A DNA stretch of 64,000 nucleotides, from positions 2,101,713-2,165,712 of the forward strand of contig CAJFCJ010000004.1 in the NCBI GenBank assembly GCA_904063045.1, written 5' to 3'. This document shows positions 6,309 through 45,600 of the stretch, in pieces. A program made the translations under genes and the position numbers. A model generated the notes under the pieces. It worked only from the letters and a program-made list of their open reading frames with translations, had not been told where the DNA came from and did no database searches. Positions within the stretch are counted from its first letter, which is position 1. Each line of letters opens with the position of its first letter. This DNA comes from Dimorphilus gyrociliatus (Eukaryota > Animalia > Annelida).

Positions 6309-7063
6309 CTTTAAAGAAAACAAGGTTTATACAGCATATCTGTGATGTTGTAATGTAAATAGCAACATTAATTAATCAATAATGTTTCAATTGCAGTCTT
6401 TATTAGCATTCTACTGATCTAAATTTGTGAATAATAGTATATAATAATATTTACAATTGCTCTTAGTCACAGTTATTGGAAGGAATCATAATCCTTTAGG
6501 GTTAAATTAGAACAATTAAGCAGTCTTCTGATTTAAGAGATAAAATCTGTGGCCTTGAGATACAAGCCTACAGTATACAGTATTTATATATATATGTTAA
6601 AATAAAGAATTTGTGTTGTTTTGAATAAGAAAGATTAGGGATTTATCAAATCAAAATGATATAATCCGCAATAAAGGTTGCTCACCCTATCCCTTGCGTT
6701 AACTATGTGAAAATGGGGACTATCCCTTAATACTTTCTTTACTTTTTCAAGATCATTCATATACACGGCTAGAAATAAGTCCAAGCTCTAAAAGCACATT
6801 AAAATAAACAAGTATTAATATCATTGATTAGGTGTTATTAAAAATAGAAAGAAAAACCGTGGAATAGTCTTCCAAGCTGTTTTGTGGAGCATATTTTGTA
6901 TATCTCTTATCCTTATTCATCTTTTGAGTAATCCTGTGTAATTATACATCAAATCCCTTTCATAAAATATATATTAATACTAAGAAAAGGTATACCATCA
7001 GGTCACATCCGTTGTTTCTAAGGACGCTTCGATCAAAACCATATGTTCTCTCAGTGGCGCCAA

Positions 7064-7073: not shown

Positions 7074-8342
7074 TCGTTTGTTTATTGATCTGCAAATTCA
7101 ATACGCACAGTTTCGCTGAGTGAGATTGATTTTTATCCGTTTATAGGCTGAAAACTGTTTTATCGATTATCGTATAACAGTTCATTGTTCAAGTATTTGA
7201 ATGGTTCAATTTGAATAATTTATTCAACAATAACATTGTAATCTCATGAATAATTATCGGAAATTTAATTTTAATATCCGGTAAAACGAATATTTCGAAT
7301 ATATTAGTACATTATTAAAGTTTTCAGATTAATAGAAAAGCAATAAAGGAAAAAGATAGAAAAAGAAATCAATAGTTGTATTGTTTATTTTTATAAATAA
7401 AAGAATGTGCGCTAAAGAGAACATTAGTTGAAACTTTTGCAGGTGTTTATTTATTGATCTCTGTCAAGGTACAAAATGCTTATAATAGACAGATTTTGTC
7501 GCTAAGTTACATTCCAATTTAATAAAGTTATAAAAACTATATTAAAATGGCATACAAACAGTTTGTTTTAACGATCATGGTTATATTTCTTTTTAACTAT
7601 TCTTACTAGTATGATGCATTCTAAATACTATAGTTTATTCTATATCCATGAAGTATATAAATAATCATTAATATATTAGGTTTAATTGAAACTGTTACGA
7701 AAATTGATTTCATATCTATTTAAACGATTTCTTTTATTCCATTTCCTTTAATTAAACACTAAACTAATTCGCGAGATTCAAATATATATACAATATGTTA
7801 TTATAGTATTTATGTAAATATGCTGTATATGTACTGTCCATATATAGATATATATAAATATTATAGAAACAATATACTGTATAATAAATGGACAAAAACA
7901 ATACGAATATTTACAATAATAGTCTATAAATAAGTAAAATATATATATTTATCGTAAATTTCGATTTTTCATACATCACTCGAAATCAACAGAGCCTTCA
8001 TTTTTTCAGTGGAGGATATTTAATCTCTGTGTTTCCTATGGATATTTAAACGATATCTGACCTAATTAAATTTCAAAATTTTTTAATAAAATACATTTGC
8101 TTATATATATTTGTCTCGTGTATTGATACAAATGTGTATTCAGACATTGTATGTAAGTTTAAAAGTAAATCATAAAATGCATGATAGTTAATTCTATTTT
8201 TAATAAAAATCGAAGAAATTTATTTTTCTTTTATTCAACCAATTTTTTTTATTTGCTGTTTTTTTGCAGTTTTAAAGAATAATATGATTAAGTTTTTACA
8301 AATAAGTACCATTCACAAGAGTTATTCAAAATATTCAAAGAA

Positions 8343-8382
<40 letters not shown>
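8343..8382. repeat. (TC)n microsatellite
   Basis: Directly visible. Confidence 0.95.
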
Positions 8383-17756: not shown

Positions 17757-20700
17757 TAGGATTTATACATCTTTCCTTAGATACAAAAGATTATGCTCTA
17801 TTATTAATTAAACAAACAGAATTACTATTAATAATATTTAAGACTAAAAATAGATAGTTGAAAAATACTCTTTTCATTTTTTTATCAGAGAAAAACATAC
17901 TTTACATTTTCTATCTATTCAGAAAAAAAAGAGAGTTATAAATGACTCTCGATAATTATTTCGATAATAGAATATAGATGGCAATACCATTGGTCATACT
18001 TTCCATCTTGCAAGAAGAAGACAGTAAACTGCTTGCAAGAGTTATATATGACGCGAAGGCCAACAATAAACGACCGTCATCTAGACAGTTAGCTGTCGCC
18101 TGCACTTTCCCAGTTGGGTCATGATTAGATATAGTCATTCCATTCTGATGCTCCGCTTCGTTAACTATGTCTCATTGATCATTCTCTTTTACATAAAAAG
18201 TGATAAAAGGGACCTTATTGTAAAAAATTCCTCATTTAGGTTTGCAAAAATAGACGTATAGTTTTGATCGATGTAAGAATACGTTAAAGATTGCATAAAT
18301 ACCTAAAATCACAATGAAATTATTGACTGAGCGAAAATTCCTTACAAATAAGAGGAAACTAACTATAAATTACATATGCATTTTGGCTATTTCCAACTAA
18401 ATAAACTGGTGCGTTTAGTTGTATAAGCAATTCACTTTCTCTTTTCCTCCCCCCCTCTCGCAGGCTTGTTCTCTTTGTTCTTTATTTTTTAAAAAATCTA
18501 TTCACGGAGAAAACCGTCGAATGATAATTTGTGACTTCCGGTTTCTTATTTCTCTTCATTCAATTTATTTTTAAATTCATTAAAATTTCGTTTCCCTTAG
18601 AAAAGCTTAAGCTATAGAATAAGAATGATCAATTTGGAACAATAGAAATGGTAGAAAGGCAACCTTAGTTAATTTTTACTGACATCTAAAGTAATCAACC
18701 GTGTTATGGAAAAGGAAAAGAGAAGACTATAGCGTTTACGAAGATACAGTATTATTCCTTTTTTATGGAAAGAGAAAGAAAACAGATCAATAGATATTAA
18801 CCAAGAATGGAACAATATTTAAGAGTGCTGTCTCCTTTTTCTTTATAAAGAAAATTTCTTTTTCATTTACCCATGGTATAAGAGAAAAGAAACATTATCG
18901 ATCTACAAATGAAGTAATAACAAAGTCTTATGCTCTCATTCAATAATTAAAAAAATCGCTTAATACCTTTCTTACATCAAAACTCTCATTCCTCTAGTGA
19001 GGAATTCTATTAAATTACTTATTATTTAAAAGAAAAATTTTGAGTTTTTGATGTTCAGTACTACCAATAGAACGATTATTTGAAGAGAAAATGAAACTAT
19101 CCTTATATTCGCTCTTTTCATCATAGGAGATAATATCTGTAAGGTAGTAAAGATTTTGTATGCTGGCGGGTACTGCTTTAGAATTAGTCAGAAATCAAAG
19201 TCAAGTCATTCACCACCATCTGAAACACTTATCCCAGAAAAAAGACTAATATTGATAGTTCCCGCCTGATTTCCTCTCACAGATCGAACATCTTGAATTC
19301 TTTATATCCTCTAATATCTATTATTACTAATGATCTATAGGTGTACAGAGAAACAGATCCTTCAATAAATACACTTTTTTTAATTATTAAAAAGCCCTAG
19401 AATGTATAATAGTGTGAAAGGAAGAATCATTAAATTAATAGTAATAAATACAGCAAAGTAATTAAAAATTTTGTTTACTACGCATTTGTTGCTTATTAAT
19501 ACGGCGTATTAGTACATATTTTATATGATATAAATCTAGCATAATTTCATTGAAAACCTATGTATCTTCTCTTTGACAAATAAGCTTTTCTAATTTATTC
19601 TATCAATAAATTAAGCTACCTAATCATTTTGATGATTATAATTAACGAACTAATATATGAGGTCTCCCACCCACAATACTTGGTTTTTTCGTCCTCTTTT
19701 TCCATTTTAACATAAATTCATCGTCAACCATATTAGCAAATGAAATGTTGAGCTACAAATATATGCTAATGGCGAGAACGGGAACTAACGCGAAATAATA
19801 GTCCTTTGAAGAAGCCTTTTGTATAGACTATAATTTATTGTACTACCTATAATAATTGATAATTACTCAGTGCTTTGGTAAAATTGTTGACTTTCATTTA
19901 GGTAAAGGTACAAAGGCTAGAATAGTACAGAAGTACCGTTTCATACCTCCATCCTATTTAGTCCCTTACATCTGTTGTTTGAAATTAAATTAGCTATTAA
20001 TTGAATCCTTTTCCGATAGAATGATCATTCAAGGAATGCCCGTTACGAAGCAACGCCATTACGTTCAATTAAACAATCTCGTATCTTTGGAAAACTTGCT
20101 TTATGCTGTAAAAAAAAAATATTTTGTAGAATTAAAAAGGAATGCTTGAAAGTAAATTTATACTTTAAAGCTATTCTTTTTTACCCTAAACGATATAATT
20201 AAACTTGTGAACTTTACTAAAGTTTCGCAAAGTCAACACTTCAAAGTGATTTTAATGATAGATGAAAAAACAAGGGCAAAAATTTATAACAAAAAGGAAA
20301 GAAAGAGAACTGAAGTATGCAAATTTAAGAAATTCGTAGAAAAGTAGAAAAACGATTTCTAATATCAGTATAATTATGGATTAGAAGGGAACTTTATTAT
20401 CTTATTTAATGACCGTTATATTTCTAATGAAACATTGATAAGTCTGTTTTTAGATAAAGTATAAATTTATACTATGTATATATTTTTACACAATTAATCA
20501 TTCATTAAAAGAACTTGAACAGCAAAATTTTCCGTTTCATTCTTTTTATGCCTTAAAAGAGTGTTTGCGTGGGTAAAATTCATATTATTTACTTTTATTA
20601 TATTATAAATATTCATGAATAATTAAAAGGATTTTCGTATAAAAACAAAAAAGAACCTCTAAACCAGTTTACGCAACGTGATCAACTTGAGAGGCTAATT

Positions 20701-36584: not shown

Positions 36585-39500
36585 TCAAGTTTTTCTTGGG
36601 AAGCTAATTTTTAATAATTTCAATAATTCAACTTTTCTCTCTTCTTCGGATATTGCCGCCAGCATTTGCCATTGTTTTAAATTTTCCCTATTAAATTTAA
36701 ACAATTATATTTATACAGTATATAGATATTTATATTTTTAATATATTTGTTGTTTTGTCTTACTTTGCTCCAGTAACTATGGGTAAAGCATCAGGGAATA
36801 TTTCAGTTATTAATTCGTAGCATGGCAAACAAATGCCAACGAGAAATCCAACTTCTAATTGGGGAAGTTCATAATACTTTTCGCGATCCATCATTGTAAT
36901 GGTTCCCTCCTCCTTCTTCTTTTCGTCATCACCCTTTTACGATTAAAAATTATTGAACTATTAATAACTCAAAGTAAAATTTGAATAATCAAAAAATGAA
37001 ACAATACACTAAATTAAAAAGCATTCAATGGTTCGTTAACGTTTATTTATATTTAATTCGTAATAAAGATTGAATATCTATCTGCTAGAAAGAATTTAAT
37101 AAAACCACAATAAAAGAAAGAAGTTATATTACATCACGTTACTAGTCTAAATGAATTCTCTTTAAAAAAAAAAGAAAAAAAGTTCTAGAATGGTAAGGGA
37201 GAAATAATTATGTTATTGCAATTGCGCCATCTACCGTTTATCAATTTTCTAAAATAGCACATAAACATTCATGTTAAACCTTACCTACATACGTAAGTAG
37301 AAGAATAACATATACTTTAAATTTTGATAAATGCGTATAAAGGTAATAAGTACTATTAAAGAAATATGATGATGATCAAATGGCTTTGCAAACATAAGAT
37401 AATTACGTAAATTAACTACTAAAGTAGAGAGTAGATAGCTAACTCTGCTTGATAAATTTCATTAAAGTGGGACATAGAGCTAATAATTATGATTTTAGAA
37501 ATCAGTGTCGATTGAAACGTTTAGGAATTAGAAAAGTTTATTATCATAAACATTTTTAATAAATATTTATGATATGCATTTTTAAGCTGAAAAACAAAAA
37601 TCTCTTTGTTTCTCTTAAAAGAAGAGAAATTGTTTACAAGGCAAAAAATGAAACTTTATTGTTTTGTTTCATTTAAAAATATAAGGCAAAAGGCTTTTTC
37701 GTTCGGTTTTTTTTTTTTGGAAAAAAGAAAAGAAAAAATAAGAAAAAAAGATATATATATGTTAAATTGTGCTAAAAACCATTTAAGCACCTGTTGCCAA
37801 AATTCTTCCATTATAACATTTACTAATTTCAATTGAAGATTCCAAGGTTTGTACATACTGCACAAATCAGATGCGGTCATGCTTATTGCCATAAGCAAAA
37901 GGCTGCGCAATCACATTTGAAGATTAGAAATATGAAAAAAAAACCGATTAATCGCGGCGTCGCTCAGCATCTAACAACACTAACAAAATAGGACAGCATG
38001 CTCGGAAAAAATCACATGACATATTGCATATTGTAATTAGATTTGTTTTTGCGATTTCTAACCTGTTCCCAAAACTCTTCATATAATTCTTTCACTTGTT
38101 CTGCATGAATGTCCCAAGGTTTCATATTGGCACATAAATCACAAGATGTCATTGTGATAGCCAATACCAGTTTGCTGGATAGTATATGATATTTACAAAG
38201 TATATTTAAATGATGATGATAATATATATATATGTATAAATATATACAGTATATGTATATAATATAAATATCTGAGATCTATTAAAATATGATTAAATAT
38301 AAAACGAGATGCTGAGCAAATATGCGCTTTTTATACAAGTATTGTAAACTAACCGACAATTTTCATTTTGCCAAGAAAATGTTCCTTCGTCAATGTTGTT
38401 CCTTAATTGGGATTTATTTGGAAAGAACAGTGCTAAGTCTGTAGCTAAGATACAATGCTTTATATTTGATAAAATTTGTCTGTACTCGTCCGATGATAAA
38501 GTATTGAATATATTATGGCCGTCATGCTGTAATTGCAAAAAAATAAAGTAAATAAAAGACATTTCTATATAAAATACATTTTAGCTCGGAATTTATTTTA
38601 AGTCGAATTTTGCAAATACCAAAGATATTATATCAATATAATCGGTCGTAAAACTAAAGCATACTTGTTATATCTGCCTTTTTCTCGCTTTTCATAAAAA
38701 CTACACTTTTATTTTTTATTACAGCCGAAAAGGAAATAAGATAGAATTCAAATGATACTCGAACTGAAGCCCGTGAAAAAAAAGGCTTTTATTTCAATTT
38801 TATCTACACTATAGTCTGTTCCAATTGTTTTTTAGAGTACATTTTTTAATATGTATCCTCAGTGTAAAGTAATACGCCGCTATATCTTTTGTATACGTTG
38901 TTTTTTTTCCGTATAGTGTATATACACAGTACACACGTAGATATATAAAAATGGAAGATATACAGTATATATATATATATGTATATGTATACAGTATTTT
39001 TTCTATATCTAATATTTGTACAGTTTATTGAATAATTGTAAATACCTGTAAAATGGCGACAGTTTGATTGAAATGGTGATGCTCCATTGTTGAAGTACTG
39101 TATATGGCTGCTAATGGGGAAGAACTTTTGACCATAAACGAATTGGTTTTACCTCGATGATCTAAATCATGACATAGTGAACCAACAAACAAACCGATTT
39201 TCTGTAATAATAATGTCAAGGACGATAGTTGAATAGATAAAAAAGAAAATTTTTGAGTTATTATACTTCAATCAAAGTAAATTGATTATTCGTATTCTTC
39301 AAAATCGTATACATTGCATGGGCGACACTAAATGCGTGCTCCCAATTGTGATAAGGTACATTTCTGTAGTTTTTCCTGACAGTTAAGGTAAATCTCATGA
39401 GTGTTTTCGCATCGAATCTATAGGGAGGGAAGGAAGAGAGGATTAAAAGAGCCATTAATCAATTTATTATAGTGTCATTTATCAAAGAATGATTCAGAAA

Positions 39501-39692: not shown

Positions 39693-42600
39693 TTATCTAG
39701 CTAGCTCTATCCTTATCTTTGTCCCTCCCTCTATCTCCCTCCTCCGTCTTGTTCTTTTAATATTTTGTTCCGTCTCCACATACTAAGTATTCATTTATTG
39801 TATTAATGTGATGACGTACACTCGTTTCTATTTACCTTCCATTATTAGTCTTGTGTACAAATATGAATAGCAATAAGAAAAAATTATACTTACGTCGCCA
39901 TTCCAAACAAATCATTGAACATGTAATAAACGTAAAGCGGCTTATTATCCAAAGACCAAGGTGAAAAATCGAATTTTGTAATATTTTCACATTTTTCTGG
40001 AAGTGGGACATCAGCCAACCTATTCACTTCGTCTTCAACAGCTTGAGAATGATAACTTAAAACTTCTAAAGCAACTTTATACTTTTGCTCTGATCTTCTA
40101 ATTTTATCATATAACTTGGCATGATACAAAGCTAAGCCGCAATAAATTCCGAAACTTTCAAAAGCCTCCTCGTCGTCTTTTGTAAATATTCCATTCGATT
40201 TGTTCAGCATTTGAACCACTCCGATAATTCTGTTTTTATCAACATTATTTACGAATTAATAGACAAGAAATAAGATTGAAATTAATTACTTAAAAATATC
40301 TACTTAAAATCGATAATAATTGCATTTTTGTTATCTAATCTATACAAAAGATTGTTCCATTTGTAAGAGATAGCTCTAAGGCGTGGCTAAATATCGTTTT
40401 AACTTGAAAAGAAAATAACAGATAGAAAGAAGAGTAGGGAGGAGACTTAAACTTATGTTTTTTATTTCTAAAATCTATTAATAATGTAATTAAACAGTTA
40501 AAGTGTATGGATAATTTAACACTGTAATTAAGCTTTTGAGGGTGTAAACTAATCTAATATTCCATTCTGGAAATTATTGATAAAGTCTAAAGAAAGATAA
40601 TGTAATTTGTTACCAAAAATATTACTTATACTTATAAAAAAATCGTCTTCAATGACAACAACGTTAAATTAAAGCGAATACCAGCTAAAAGCATTTTATC
40701 AATACTTCCGCATTATAAGTATTTTTTTATAGAAAAACTCAAACTGACTGTCTTTGAAGGTGAATAGAGGCTCCTATACTTTTATACGCATATATAATAT
40801 ATGCATATACGTAAATTGTGTACGCATATATAGCCTTGTATTCTTTGTACTAGAGTAGGTATTGTAGGTATTGAGTTGAATGCCTTTTCATATGTATTAT
40901 ATGTAAAAGTATATAGATAGTGTATGAAAATGATCGCTATGCCTATGAAATGTATTTATCGCTGTATAGTATCTTTAGATGTATTCTATATCTTATATAC
41001 TAATATATGTATATATATATATATATATATATTATACCCCGCGTGTAAAATTAACAGGTGTATCTAATGGATAAGTAATCTCTTGTGCATTTCAAGAAAA
41101 CGGTTGATCTTGGTTCAAAAGCATAAGTCAATAAGAATATATAAAATTTAGGCAAGGGTAAATACTGTAGAAATATTTAACCCAATTAATCAACATTATC
41201 GCATGATTTTGTGATAAGCCCTGTCGTAGCTAAGACCTACTTTAAAACAGGAACGTTGCATTGACAAGCAGTAGCCACTCTTATAATGTTGATAATCTTA
41301 TCAACTAGATACTCTCTCCCTCAACAGTTTCTTTAACTGTAAGTTCTTTGTAAAGCATAGACTCTTTGATAGCCATATACCAAATGAAACAAGCTCATAA
41401 TTCTATCAAAGATATTAATGTTAACTTTACAGAATCATTCTACTGTTGCCTTACTTTTAGGAGAGAAATGATATTTTCTTCAAAGAAAGAAAACAATATA
41501 TTCATACATTTCTCTATTAAGTTATTTAAGCTATTCATTTTAAAACCTAAAATGGGTTTTACAGCACTAACACAATCTCAGATAGGCAATGTCTATATTG
41601 GTGTGAATGTGATATTGTTTTATGAGAGATCTCACAGAGAGCATCTATTATTTTCACTATTTTGAAAGTAAGAGGAGAGTCATAACTTGAAATAGTCTTT
41701 TGTGTGAGATTTTAGAGCTCACATATGTAATGTTTAAGGGGCATATATTCTGTATATATATATAGACTCTATATATAAAGGAAAACAATCAAATGCTACT
41801 ATGAATAAATACTTTACGTACTATATTTAAAAGCTAAAAACTTTTTCAATGTTTCTTATATAAGCTATATATAGAACATTTGTTATATATAAGGTATCTA
41901 TTCATATTTAAAACTACCTTCATTCCTTTACCAGTTTATGGATCAAAAACCTTTTATCTCTAACGTTATAGTTTGACGCATTTGATTAATTTACCTATTA
42001 AAATTCTTTCAAAGAGAGCTGACTCAAGCATGCTTTTTCTATTCCATTACTATTTTTAATATGACTATTAATTTAATAGATTATCTATTCAATTATTTCT
42101 TTTTACTTAGTACTTTGTATCAGTTATCCTTATTTGTCTGTTTCCTTTCTCTCTTACTTTGAATATCAATAACAAATGAATGTTAGGGTAACTTACGTTT
42201 TCTTCAATTTTATTGGCATACACAAAATTGTTTTAGTTGTATAACCAGTTTGAATATCGACTTGTCTATTAAATCTCTCATCGCTGTAGGCATCGTGGAT
42301 ATTTACAGTTTCACCAGTTGTAGCAACGTAGCCAGCAACGCCTTTGTCCATTGGAAATCTGTATTAGAATTATGAGATTGATAGATTTATTCCCTATACG
42401 ATTTGTTTCTAGATATAAAGCTAGGAAAGAGCTTGATTTAGAAAATTAAATAAAAATCACTAAGTAAAAATATTTATTCCTAAGAAAGAATTGATGTTAG
42501 CTTTGGCCAGTGCAAGACAATAGTACTGGTCGACCTTATTTCCTTTTGAATGGAGAGTGCAGTAGATTCCTTTTCGTCTGTACCCATATCGAATACTCTG

Positions 42601-45600
42601 GCATATAGTTGTCTGCTTTTATTATCCAATAAAAATAATGCCGTCCTGTCGGCTTGAACGAGTTTTTTGGCAAAATCCTGCAAATTTGCGGTGAGGTTAA
42701 GTGCAATTAAAAAGAATTCCAAAAATTAAGTGATTAGATCGTTATATAGGAATCTTTAATCGTCTTTTTCATTTCTATAGTATTCATTAATTATGTAGTT
42801 AATTAATTCTAGTTTGTATTGCATATAGGATGCCAGATATTTTCCTTTTTGTTACTTACTATTAAAAACTATTTATCAATGAAAGGTTTTGTAAGTTAAA
42901 GTACGATAAATTAGTCAATAGAAGAGAAAAGAGGTGAAGATAAATGTAAAGGACAAGAAACTGGAAAGAAAGAGAGAAAGAGAGAGAGAGAGAATAACTA
43001 AATTGAACAAGTGAGATAAAGGCGAGAAGCACAAATCAGAAGAGAATAAGGGGAAGTAGCATTCGTCAAAGTTCTTTAAAATGTGTACAGACAGAAAAAA
43101 TTTAGAAAACTGGCAAATTAAGCATTGGACTAAAATTTCGTGTACGTTTGTTAATTAATTTGTTAAAAACTAGTGTGTAATTTAAAAATAGACTCGTCTG
43201 TAAACATCAGTCGTGTAAATTATTCTCTTTTTTTTATTTCTCTCCCGTTTCCTCTTATATAATATTGTCTTAATAAGTATACAATGAAGAGTAAAAGGAA
43301 TGAGAAAATATATTAAAGTTACAGATAGAAATACAATTTCAAAGTAATATTTTATAAATGAAAGAAATATGATGGATAGAAAATTGATAAAACAAGTTGT
43401 CCAAAAAGAATTATATAAATTAGAATTGAACCTAAATCGTGCATGCAAACCTGACTTCTTTTCTGCTGACAGTTGAAAATTCAGTATCGAAAACACGCGC
43501 ATATAACTGCTTGTTGGTTTGATCAACGAGGAAAAGAGACGCCCTATCTGCGTTTACTAGAAACTGGGCTAATTTCTGAATAACTTTCACTTAAATTTTT
43601 CATAAAAATTTTATAAGAATAAGCCTTACTCACCATTATCTTCATGATTACTGTATCCATGGAAATATCTTGAAATATAGATCTGTTTAAATTATAAGCA
43701 AAAGAAAAAAAACGTTTAATTATGATTGCGATCTATTGATCATTAAAAGTTTATCCTTAAGAGCTTACTTGGCAACACTTAAAAGGAATTCGTTCAATTT
43801 TCTCTGTCTCGTCATATTGTAGTACATCTGTTAGCAGATTAAATACATTAGATCTTAATACATAATTGATGAAACAACACTAGAAAGCAGCAGACAACAT
43901 AATTAATCAATAAAATAGATGGATGTAGATGTCTAGAGAAAAAAAATAATAATTTTGTTTTATTAATAAAATAATCGCAATCAAACTTCATAATAATAAT
44001 AATGATAATGATAATAAAAAGAATAAATAAAACAAAGTAAGAGAGAAACGAAACTAATACGAAGATGAGGGGAAAAAAATAACAAAACAACAGTAATAAA
44101 AGTTAGTATTACGACGCCAATTTGATCATCAAAATGAAATAAAAAAAGAATTTTTTATATAAAAGATATATAAAATATTTTTTTTACCAAAAACAAAAAA
44201 TATTTTCGAGAATCTTTTTTTTTTAAAAAACAAAAAAAAGGAAATATTTATAAAAATAAAAAAAAGAAGAAGAGATCTATTTTTTTTTTAAAATAAAATA
44301 AAAGTGTACATTGCACAAATTGGGTCAAACCTGAGCAAAATTCACAACTAATTCTCCCCAAACTGTTAATTCTCCCGTTATCTAAAAAAATTAGTTAAAC
44401 ACAAAAAAAACTTAGCATTAAAATAATTAGAAAATTAGTATTGTTAAAATGGCTTTGAAGCTAAGACTATGGAACAATTGAAGATAACTAGGCAATTATT
44501 TCATGGCGAATAAAATAAAATTAAATTTTCTATTAAAGAAAATTAAATTAATTCACACTTTTAATTTTTTTTTATTGTCCTTTTATAATTGCCTAAAAAT
44601 CTCTATAGCGCCTTTTTTATAAGCACGATATCATACCTTTTGACACGGTAGAAGGTAATTTAAATGCGTTAATAATATTTCTCCTGACTGATTTTATATA
44701 AAAGAAGGTAAAAGAAATAGTAAAAAAACTTTTCATATATATATATAATTACATATAAATATCCAAATGTCTCATATTAATTTTTATACATATATATATA
44801 TAGAATACATATTTTTATGTTTCTTTTATATATAAAGTACAATATTCACCTCTTGTTCGTCCTCATTAAATGGTGTATGCCCAACAGTCCTGTATAATTC
44901 AATGACACCCAATAACTCTTCCGTGTCCAAATGAATAATAGGAAAGGCGAGAACAGATTGAGCACTTCCTCCATCATTTGCCGGACCTAATCCTTCAGGA
45001 TATCTATCATCCTAGATAAAAAGTAATTCGTAATAATTTATAATTGTCAACGTATCATGAAAATCGTTAAATTCCATTGTAATACTAACTATAATATGCT
45101 ATCTCTATTTTATATTGAAAAGAGAGACAATAGACTATTAAATAATACTATATAAACAACTAAAAACGGAAAAGGATGAATATATATGCTTTAAGAAAAA
45201 GTACGAAATCCGATAACTTACTTAAAGAAAAAAAATAAGAATCCTATTATAGCTAAAAATGATTAATCTATTAGATTAACAAAAATATATTTACCCCAAG
45301 AATTTCATCAACCCTCGTTGTTTTCCTTACATGAGCAACAAAGGCGGCCAGACAACTTCCTTCGCCAACGTCTCGGACCAAAGGAGAAACCGATCGATCA
45401 CTATTATTACGCAATAGAATTAGAGGAAGAGAGATAGATAAATATATAGATGGATAGATAGATAGATGATTAGATAGATAGACGGCTATATAGATAGATG
45501 GTTAGATAGAGCGGAAGAGAGTAAAAGAAAGAGAGAGAGAGAGAGTAGGAGGGATGGAATGAAAGATAAAAAACAAATAAGATATATATATATATATATG

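What the first reader, a model, noticed from the sequence alone, without database searches (positions are those of the whole stretch)
37791..38174. Mutually exclusive duplicated exons swap the substrate pocket of a PDE10-like phosphodiesterase
Seen: two paralogous 112-nt exons in tandem, A (38174-38063) and B (37902-37791), each with CAG/GT sites and both phase 2 to phase 0. Including both or neither breaks the frame, while either alone gives an 821-aa protein. Both keep MT..DLC...KPW...........EEFW.Q, so both look selected. Established: this segment carries the metal-binding Asp (PDE10A2 D674) and the pocket wall around the invariant Gln. Counting from that Asp: +3 is Ala in A and Ser in B (PDE5 A767, PDE10 S677, PDE4D N321); +4 is Asn/Met; +11 is His/Gln (His in dual-specific PDE1/PDE3, Gln775 in cGMP-specific PDE5, Tyr329 in PDE4D); +18/+19 is Leu-Tyr/Ile-Met (PDE10 I692-Y693 selectivity pocket versus PDE4D I336-M337). 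Inference: one gene encodes two enzymes with the same GAF sensors but different cAMP/cGMP preference or inhibitor sensitivity, a splice-operated specificity switch. I do not know of this being described for PDE10, but I could not search.
Basis: partly seen in the sequence, partly recalled or inferred. Interest (0 to 1): 0.92.

Follow-up and report, generated by a model that had tools for sequence, protein, structure and literature searches.

The report
Alternative pocket exons in PDE10 gene
An invertebrate PDE10-type cyclic-nucleotide phosphodiesterase gene carries two swappable 112-base copies of the exon that builds one wall of its active site; the same pair exists in molluscs and a ribbon worm, but here only copy B is confirmed in RNA, and that RNA comes from a close relative.

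Summary
Exons A (38174-38063) and B (37902-37791, minus strand) are both 112 nt, share AG/GT sites and phase, are 60% identical in DNA, and both match Pfam PDEase_I. Either alone keeps the frame. Both or neither gives an early stop.

The pair is old. Tandem A-type and B-type exons lie in the same order in a snail and a pearl oyster. RefSeq isoforms of one gene differ by exactly this exon in mussel, oyster, abalone, scallops and a nemertean. A coral has one copy. A starfish and an acorn worm have a pair of their own at this exon.

RNA contigs from a close relative join upstream exon, B and downstream exon. No contig with A was seen in the four runs laid.

The copies differ at positions that line the PDE10A pocket.

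I found no paper describing this, but public gene models already show it, so it is a new member of a known kind. The gene holds a second swappable exon pair in GAF-B and has Glu in place of the invariant Gln. Earlier scan notes report other exclusive exon pairs, in other genes, elsewhere in this genome.

The parts
38354..38532 (-). 3' part of the constitutive upstream PDEase exon. It ends at 38354 with ..TGT CG, followed by the gttagt donor.
   Evidence: Pfam PDEase_I 42.3 bits.
38063..38174 (-). Exon A: 112 nt, ancestral-type ('A-type') copy. It encodes the metal-binding Asp and the helix lining the pocket. The copy is divergent (long branch).
   Evidence: It is 22-25/37 identical to gastropod and arthropod A-type exons. 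No RNA contig was seen.
37903..38062 (-). 160-nt intron between A and B. Its GC is 35%, against 20-24% in the neighbouring introns. It holds one arm of the candidate looping helix.
37791..37902 (-). Exon B: 112 nt, spiralian 'B-type' copy with Met-Tyr before KPW and Ile-Met before EEFW. It is the form seen in RNA.
   Evidence: RNA contigs of three runs cover 37790-37899 with no mismatch and continue into the upstream and downstream exons.
36763..36933 (-). Downstream exon ([17 protein letters not shown]..). It carries Glu (36853-36855) at the place of the invariant Gln. Here it is fused with the following exon of relatives.
   Evidence: Pfam PDEase_I 34.9 bits.
38307..38317 (-). Arm 1 of an 11-nt perfect inverted repeat, in the intron upstream of A. 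Paired with arm 2 it would loop out exon A.
   Evidence: I25. The duplex between the upstream intron and the A-B intron is -44.1 kcal/mol, against -33.3 +/- 4.9 in 200 mononucleotide shuffles; 1.5% of shuffles reach it.
37962..37972 (-). Arm 2 of the same inverted repeat, in the A-B intron.
43451..43575 (-). First copy (125 nt, phase 0 to 2) of the exon that starts GAF-B. It is a candidate second mutually exclusive pair in the same gene.
42535..42677 (-). Second copy (143 nt, phase 0 to 2) of the exon that starts GAF-B. It is the copy closer to relatives.
   Evidence: Haliotis and Lineus isoforms differ at this same exon.

Best explanation
Exons A and B are this animal's copies of an ancient tandem duplication of one 112-nt exon in the catalytic domain of the PDE10 orthologue (the C. 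elegans pde-5 type: GAF-GAF-PDEase). One copy is spliced into each mRNA.

Shown: the length of 112 nt (3n+1) means that mRNAs with both or neither copy run into an early stop.

Inferred: such mRNAs are removed by nonsense-mediated decay. The choice between A and B is probably regulated, perhaps helped by pairing between the intron before A and the A-B intron, which would loop A out.

B is the spiralian-specific type and is the isoform seen in RNA. A keeps the ancestral type and is most likely a minor or tissue-restricted isoform.

The swapped 37 residues hold the metal-binding Asp and the helix that forms one wall of the nucleotide pocket. The two proteins therefore share their GAF sensors but differ in pocket lining: Asn/Met at Asp+4, Met/Tyr at +5, His/Gln at +11, Leu-Tyr/Ile-Met at +18/+19. 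That this changes substrate kinetics, nucleotide preference or ligand sensitivity is inference. Which property changes, and in what direction, is unknown.
For: Anatomy and frame logic. Both copies score as PDEase_I and align to the same helix of solved PDEs.

Orthology and age:
- A-type and B-type 112-nt exons lie in tandem, in the same order, in Bulinus (L001) and Pinctada (L003).
- Porites (L004) has a single copy.
- In the tree, a B-type clade holds spiralians only (support 96/85) and includes window B. Window A falls with gastropod A-types in the ancestral group.

Use of both copies in relatives: RefSeq isoforms of one gene differ exactly by this exon in Mytilus edulis, Crassostrea virginica, Haliotis rufescens, Argopecten, Pecten and Lineus. 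Proteins predicted from Logan run assemblies carry an A-type (P0179) or a B-type (P0152, P0405).

RNA: contigs of runs X2, X4 and X10 join upstream exon, B and downstream exon.

Pocket positions: the PDE10A active-site list for 5UWF in PMC8979230 includes L675, V678, I692, Y693 and F696, all inside this exon. The types differ systematically at the 678 and 693 equivalents.

Exon A keeps an open frame, canonical splice sites and exon-like GC.
Against: - No RNA contig containing exon A was found in the four runs laid, and contigs drop rare variants.
- The RNA comes from a relative, not the same genome: 7 of 57 flanking-exon bases differ.
- Window A sits on a long branch (0.52 against 0.16 for B). 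It departs from the A-type consensus at otherwise conserved positions, Gln+11 and Thr+14 among them. That could mean relaxed constraint.
- The annelid Ridgeia appears to have lost the A-type copy, so loss does happen.
- The intron pairing is supported only by one genome and mononucleotide shuffles.
- No biochemical data exist for any isoform.
Confidence: 0.7

Rival explanations
1. Exon A is no longer used in this lineage. It is a recently silenced copy of the old pair that still looks intact, and the gene makes only the B isoform.
For: Only B is seen in RNA contigs. Window A has a long branch and unusual residues at conserved positions. Ridgeia shows that the A-type copy can be lost.
Against: The frame is open over 37 codons in a 29% GC genome, where about 8% of random codons would be stops, so roughly 4% of such stretches stay open by chance (my estimate from base composition). 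Both splice sites are intact, the length is exactly 112 nt, and the catalytic Asp and the KPW and EEFW motifs are kept. GC is 36.6% against 20-24% in the outer introns. The peptide scores 29.1 bits on Pfam, as good as B. Contigs cannot show absence.
Confidence: 0.2
2. One reading: the swap is a dedicated cAMP-versus-cGMP specificity switch.
For: The differing positions include equivalents of residues that anchor or flank the purine-recognising residue in other PDEs. From my own knowledge these are PDE4D N321/Y329/M337 and PDE5 A767/Q775. The partner of the invariant Gln in PDE9 is Glu406 (PMC3069055); by my own numbering (D402 as the metal Asp), that is the +4 position, which is Asn in A and Met in B.
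Against: No assay exists. PMC3069055 argues that the invariant glutamine is unlikely to decide between cGMP and cAMP. The His/Gln contrast at +11 is not conserved between types. The recognising residue is Glu here, so analogies with Gln-based PDEs are weak.
Confidence: 0.2
3. The pair works mainly as a dosage control. Inclusion of both copies, or skipping of both, makes stop-containing mRNA that is degraded, and A has no protein role of its own.
For: Both and neither give early stops.
Against: A poison exon needs no conserved catalytic residues. The A-type peptide has been conserved across phyla for hundreds of millions of years and is annotated in productive isoforms in relatives.
Confidence: 0.05

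Closest known systems
RefSeq isoforms of 'probable 3',5'-cyclic phosphodiesterase pde-5' (PDE10 orthologue) in Haliotis rufescens, Mytilus edulis, Crassostrea virginica, Argopecten irradians, Pecten maximus and Lineus longissimus
   Same: The same exon, the same two types (ancestral A-type; B-type with MY..KPW and IMEEFW), and one or the other in each isoform. The genomic order is A then B in Bulinus and Pinctada.
   Different: Those are automatic gene models, and I found no paper describing them. The window's A copy is more divergent (Asn-Met at +4/+5, His at +11, Trp at +23). Oysters, Pinctada and Ridgeia add a second alternative pair in the next exon (Gln or Glu version), which the window lacks.
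Tandem pair of the same exon in Ambulacraria (Asterias rubens L005 42425-42535 and 46133-46243; Ptychodera flava isoforms)
   Same: The same 112-nt exon is duplicated in tandem and used alternatively.
   Different: The second type there (KPF..) groups inside the ancestral cluster, not with the spiralian B-type. It is probably an independent duplication; a 37-residue tree cannot settle this.
PKM exons 9/10 (pyruvate kinase M1/M2) and similar enzyme MXE pairs (my own knowledge)
   Same: Equal-length paralogous exons, mutually exclusive, that swap a functional pocket of an enzyme while the rest of the protein is unchanged.
   Different: In PKM the swapped segment forms an allosteric and dimer-interface site, not the substrate pocket, and its splicing regulators are known. 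Nothing is known here.
Vertebrate PDE10A splice variants (PDE10A1, A2, A19)
   Same: The same gene family, with alternative splicing.
   Different: As far as I know, and as in PMC4872433 (listed), the vertebrate variants differ at the N-terminus, not inside the catalytic pocket.
Insect MXE clusters selected by competing intronic RNA pairing (Dscam1, 14-3-3 xi; my own knowledge)
   Same: Tandem duplicated exons. A candidate intronic helix (38307-38317 with 37962-37972) would loop out one copy.
   Different: The pairing here is a single 11-13 bp helix with weak statistical support. No conservation test was possible.

Membership tests
Class I PDE, PDE10 orthologue (GAF-GAF-PDEase; C. elegans pde-5 type) | PDEase_I catalytic domain with the His/Asp metal motifs | tested here: met
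   Pfam PDEase_I on four consecutive exons plus A and B. HNWEHAF and CHDLDHRG are seen in the translations.
Class I PDE, PDE10 orthologue (GAF-GAF-PDEase; C. elegans pde-5 type) | Two N-terminal GAF domains | tested here: met
   Pfam GAF scores 27.2 bits on 42211-42360, and 21.1 bits (just under the cut-off) on 44847-45011. Full-length relatives carry GAF/GAF_2/GAF_3 plus PDEase_I.
Class I PDE, PDE10 orthologue (GAF-GAF-PDEase; C. elegans pde-5 type) | Closest to PDE10 rather than PDE2, 5, 6 or 11 | tested here: met
   The HD exon scores 68 bits to PDE10A, against 55 to PDE2A and 49 to PDE5A. The best database relatives are named pde-5 or PDE10. Exons A and B alone score slightly higher to PDE6 than to PDE10A.
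Class I PDE, PDE10 orthologue (GAF-GAF-PDEase; C. elegans pde-5 type) | Invariant purine-recognising glutamine (PDE10A Q726) | tested here: not met
   The window reads LPQLE-VGF, with Glu at 36853-36855. The same Glu is found in most mollusc orthologues. Orthology is not in doubt; this is a departure from the family rule.
Mutually exclusive exon pair from tandem exon duplication | Adjacent exons of equal length and phase with sequence homology and canonical splice sites | tested here: met
Mutually exclusive exon pair from tandem exon duplication | Joint inclusion or joint skipping is non-productive | tested here: met
   Early stops in both cases.
Mutually exclusive exon pair from tandem exon duplication | mRNAs with exactly one copy, each copy seen | tested here: inconclusive
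   B-only contigs were seen in three runs of a close relative. No A contig and no A+B contig was seen.
Mutually exclusive exon pair from tandem exon duplication | Both copies conserved in other species and used alternatively there | tested here: met
   Genomic pairs in Bulinus and Pinctada. Isoform pairs in six spiralian species.
MXE cluster selected by competing RNA secondary structure | Conserved docking/selector pairing in the introns | tested here: inconclusive
   There is one perfect 11-nt inverted repeat. The duplex energy is exceeded by 1.5% of shuffles for the upstream/middle introns and is not unusual for the middle/downstream introns. No close relative's genome was available to test conservation.

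The most novel reading that the evidence does not exclude
Spiralian PDE10 genes encode a combinatorial set of catalytic pockets through several mutually exclusive exon clusters. These are the helix exon (A/B), the next exon in Gln or Glu versions, a candidate pair at the HD-motif exon, and a GAF-B exon. In this animal the purine-recognising residue is fixed as Glu. On this reading, the A/B swap changes the residues that sit against that Glu (Asn/Met, His/Gln, Tyr/Met), and so switches nucleotide preference or affinity between cell types.
Probability: 0.25. Interest if true: 0.8.

Novelty: new member of a known kind. Interest (0 to 1): 0.55.

Why it matters
As far as I know, PDE isoforms have been described as differing in their N-terminal targeting and regulatory parts, with a fixed catalytic pocket for each gene. 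Here the pocket wall itself is exchanged by splicing. The arrangement has been kept since before molluscs and nemerteans split (rotifer proteins also carry the B-type), and a pair at the same exon exists in starfish and acorn worms.

Together with the natural Gln-to-Glu change at the 'invariant' glutamine in molluscs, this gives a ready-made natural experiment on what sets nucleotide preference in PDEs. It also shows that automatic gene models for this gene are sometimes wrong, because they read through the pair or include both copies.

For the window itself the result is more modest. It is one more, rather divergent, member of that conserved pair, and only the B form is so far seen in RNA.

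Tried and rejected
The second had to be limited to 37775-38215. Joints to the outer exons therefore appear only as loose ends, and no further runs could be laid.
- two metagenome scans found nothing. One used a degenerate exon-A pattern, the other the end of the upstream exon.
- a profile of window exon pieces on a Ridgeia scaffold did not bring up the window's own protein or any close relative. The best relatives are about 54-56% identical. I could not look for annotated A or B isoforms of this species or name it.
- the look-up of encoding contigs had no record for five RefSeq isoforms, and the Diadema gene was too long to fetch.
- a dinucleotide-shuffle script timed out, so mononucleotide shuffles were used instead.
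- pairing between the A-B intron and the downstream intron was not unusual, with 74% of shuffles as good. This holds despite a 13-nt U-run/A-run inverted repeat (I12), so I do not propose a helix looping out B.
- Steric hindrance is rejected as the exclusivity mechanism, because the A-B intron is 160 nt. U2/U12 incompatibility is also rejected, because all three donors are GT with U2-like context.
- Assembly artefact is rejected. The copies are 60% identical and 160 nt apart on one contig.
- no Gln-version copy of the downstream exon and no second HD exon were found in the window.
- The 821-aa gene model was not rebuilt.

Full report
**Observation**

On the minus strand the window carries a GAF-GAF-PDEase gene, running from about 46300 to 36590. 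Two 112-nt exons lie 160 nt apart between the exon that ends at 38354 and the exon that starts at 36933. They are A (38174-38063) and B (37902-37791).

Both have AG acceptors and GT donors. Both start with one base that completes a codon begun by the upstream exon, and both end on a full codon. They are 67/112 identical in DNA and 17/37 in protein.

Spliced in silico, either one alone gives an open frame. A plus B stops after 11 codons of B, and skipping both stops after 13 codons. Each peptide on its own passes the Pfam gathering score for PDEase_I at the same profile positions, at 29.1 and 30.1 bits. Each aligns to the helix that carries the last metal-binding Asp in solved PDE6, PDE5 and PDE10A structures. 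I did not check the 821-aa length.

**What the gene is**

The HD-motif exon matches PDE10A best among solved structures: 68 bits, against 55 for PDE2A and 49 for PDE5A. A library-wide search with the longest exon, and then a search with the best full-length hit, return the family that NCBI names 'probable 3',5'-cyclic phosphodiesterase pde-5' or PDE10. This family runs from cnidarians to amphioxus.

No relative closer than about 54-56% identity was found. The nearest are a sea urchin model, a nemertean, an annelid and molluscs. The animal is therefore probably a lophotrochozoan, but I cannot name it.

**The pair is old and is used in relatives**

Across the fetched proteins the homologous 37 residues come in two types. 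The A-type resembles arthropods, cnidarians and deuterostomes. The B-type has Met-Tyr/Phe before KPW and Ile-Met before EEFW, and occurs only in molluscs, annelids, nemerteans and rotifers.

Genomic loci:

| Species (locus) | Exon copies found |
|---|---|
| Snail Bulinus (L001) | A-type 6765-6876, B-type 8238-8349, in tandem |
| Pearl oyster Pinctada (L003) | A-type 18053-18164, B-type 18572-18683, in tandem |
| Coral Porites (L004) | one copy |
| Tubeworm Ridgeia (L002) | only the B-type |

All of these exons are 112 nt, share the same phase, and lie in the same A-then-B order as in the window.

A maximum-likelihood tree of the 37-residue segment has few columns, so only the main split is trustworthy. 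It separates a spiralian-only B-type clade (support 96/85) that contains window B from the rest. Window A sits next to gastropod A-types on a long branch.

Members of 90%-identity clusters show RefSeq isoforms of one gene that differ by exactly this exon. This holds in Mytilus edulis, Crassostrea virginica, Haliotis rufescens, Argopecten irradians, Pecten maximus and the nemertean Lineus longissimus. Proteins predicted from Logan run assemblies carry either type (P0179 A-type; P0152 and P0405 B-type).

A starfish (Asterias rubens, L005 42425-42535 and 46133-46243) and an acorn worm have a pair of their own at the same exon. This is probably an independent duplication.

**RNA evidence for the window**

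The run index found RNA runs that hold words of the stretch.

The second lay, on 37775-38215, placed contigs from three of four runs on exon B only, with no mismatch over 110 nt. The loose ends read straight into the end of the upstream exon and the start of the downstream exon.

Those loose ends differ from the window at 7 of 57 positions. Six of the seven are synonymous and one changes Glu to Asp. The RNA therefore comes from a close relative, or possibly from a paralogue, and not from this very genome.

Exon B shows no difference over 110 nt. The Fisher test gives p = 0.0004, or 0.017 if the first three bases of B, which do differ, are counted. This points to extra constraint on the DNA of exon B, as is common for regulated exons. 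The comparison is biased, however, because the runs were found through exact 31-letter words.

No contig with exon A, and none joining A to B, was seen. Contigs drop rare forms, so this does not show absence. Run X2 held more sampled words (0.35) than exon B alone should give (about 0.23). That is a weak hint of something more in that run.

**Mechanism**

Shown: the frame rule.

Inferred:
- Stop-containing A+B or skipped mRNAs are removed by nonsense-mediated decay.
- Steric exclusion is unlikely, because the intron between the copies is 160 nt.
- All donors look U2-type.
- One candidate selector exists. It is an 11-nt perfect inverted repeat, with one arm before A (38307-38317) and one between A and B (37962-37972). 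It was already noted by the scan (s1-081106).
- The best duplex between these two introns is -44.1 kcal/mol, against -33.3 +/- 4.9 in shuffles, and 1.5% of shuffles reach it. Pairing would loop A out and favour B. This is weak evidence from one genome.
- The A-B intron is also unusually GC-rich, at 35% against 20-24%.

**What the swap changes**

The vertebrate PDE10A segment stands in P0206 and aligns without gaps, so the exon corresponds to PDE10A residues 663-699 if the Asp is D674. The numbering is from my own knowledge.

A published active-site list for PDE10A structure 5UWF names L675, V678, I692, Y693 and F696 (PMC8979230). All five lie in this exon.

I compared 15 distinct spiralian A-type and 42 distinct B-type sequences (the Tyr/Phe at +5 and Met at +19 were my criteria for picking the B-type set). 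The stable differences between types are:

| Position from Asp | A-type | B-type |
|---|---|---|
| +4 | mostly Ser | Met |
| +5 | Ala/Thr | Tyr/Phe |
| +14 | Thr | Leu/Val/Ile |
| +19 | Phe/Tyr | Met |
| +23 | Tyr | Trp |

The window compares as follows:

| Position from Asp | Window A | Window B |
|---|---|---|
| +3 | Ala | Ser |
| +4 | Asn | Met |
| +5 | Met | Tyr |
| +11 | His | Gln |
| +18/+19 | Leu-Tyr | Ile-Met |

The His/Gln contrast is peculiar to this animal, since both types have Gln at +11 almost everywhere.

The residue the pocket is built around is not Gln here but Glu (36853-36855; noted as s1-082448). The same Glu is found in most mollusc orthologues. This weakens analogies with Gln-based PDEs. 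A PDE9 study of the Q453E mutant concluded that the invariant glutamine matters for binding but probably not for telling cGMP from cAMP (PMC3069055). A change in pocket properties is thus a reasonable inference. A cAMP/cGMP switch is only one possibility.

**Rivals**

- The main rival is that A has fallen silent in this lineage. Points for it: only B is seen in RNA, window A has a long branch, and Ridgeia has lost its A copy. Points against it: the frame is open, the splice sites are intact, the length is exact, the catalytic motifs are kept, the GC is exon-like and the Pfam score is full. I put this rival at about 0.2.
- A pure poison-exon role is unlikely, given the conserved catalytic sequence.

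**Novelty**

Four full-text searches found no paper on mutually exclusive exons in PDE10 or any PDE catalytic domain. Public RefSeq models nevertheless already show the isoforms in many species.

The mechanism, tandem exon duplication with exclusive use, is well known, also for enzymes. I therefore class this as a new member of a known kind. Its interest is moderate and comes from three points: where it sits (the pocket), its age, and its neighbours in the same gene.

Earlier notes of this scan report other exclusive exon pairs elsewhere in this genome (s1-080237, s1-080243). They concern other genes, so the scan had not met this PDE pair before on other DNA.

Noticed in passing
window 43451-43575 and 42535-42677 (minus strand): The exon that starts GAF-B is also present twice (125 and 143 nt). 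Both copies run from phase 0 to phase 2 with AG/GT sites, so taking both breaks the frame. Haliotis rufescens and Lineus longissimus isoforms differ at this same exon. It is probably a second mutually exclusive pair in the gene.
   Followed up: partly
window 36853-36855; proteins: The 'invariant' purine-recognising Gln (PDE10A Q726) is Glu here and in most mollusc PDE10 orthologues (LP.LE-VGF). It is Gln in arthropods, cnidarians, deuterostomes, nemerteans and Owenia.
   Followed up: partly
L003 18911-18991 and 19566-19640; L002 25018-25098 and 26533-26607; C. virginica isoforms P0156/P0331/P0328; Lineus isoforms: The next exon (GDEEK..MMDR..LP..) is also duplicated in tandem in Pinctada and Ridgeia, as a Gln version followed by a Glu version. 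Oyster isoforms use one or the other, in the combinations B+Q, B+E and A+E. Lineus has two Gln versions. At 81 nt, joint inclusion keeps the frame. The window has only the Glu version, fused to the following exon.
   Followed up: partly
L002 18019-18171 and 19798-19959: Ridgeia piscesae carries two copies (59% identical) of the exon with the HD metal motif. This is a further candidate alternative pair in the catalytic domain.
   Followed up: no
L005 42425-42535 and 46133-46243; Ptychodera isoforms P0372/P0377: A starfish and an acorn worm have their own tandem pair of the same 112-nt exon (a KPW type and a KPF type), used alternatively in RefSeq isoforms. In the tree the second type does not group with the spiralian B-type.
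   Followed up: partly
window 37903-38062: The intron between A and B has 35% GC, as high as the exons, while the flanking introns have 20-24%. This may reflect splicing control elements.
   Followed up: no
window 37791-37902 against RNA contigs of X2, X4 and X10: Exon B is identical over 110 nt to RNA of a relative whose flanking exons differ at 7 of 57 bases, six of them synonymous. This suggests constraint on the DNA or RNA itself, but the comparison is biased by how the runs were found.
   Followed up: partly
P0211 (Bulinus), P0155 (Pinctada), P0238 (Periplaneta): Deposited gene models mishandle these clusters. P0211 reads through from the A-type exon and includes both copies. P0155 and P0238 include both versions of the next exon.
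   Followed up: partly
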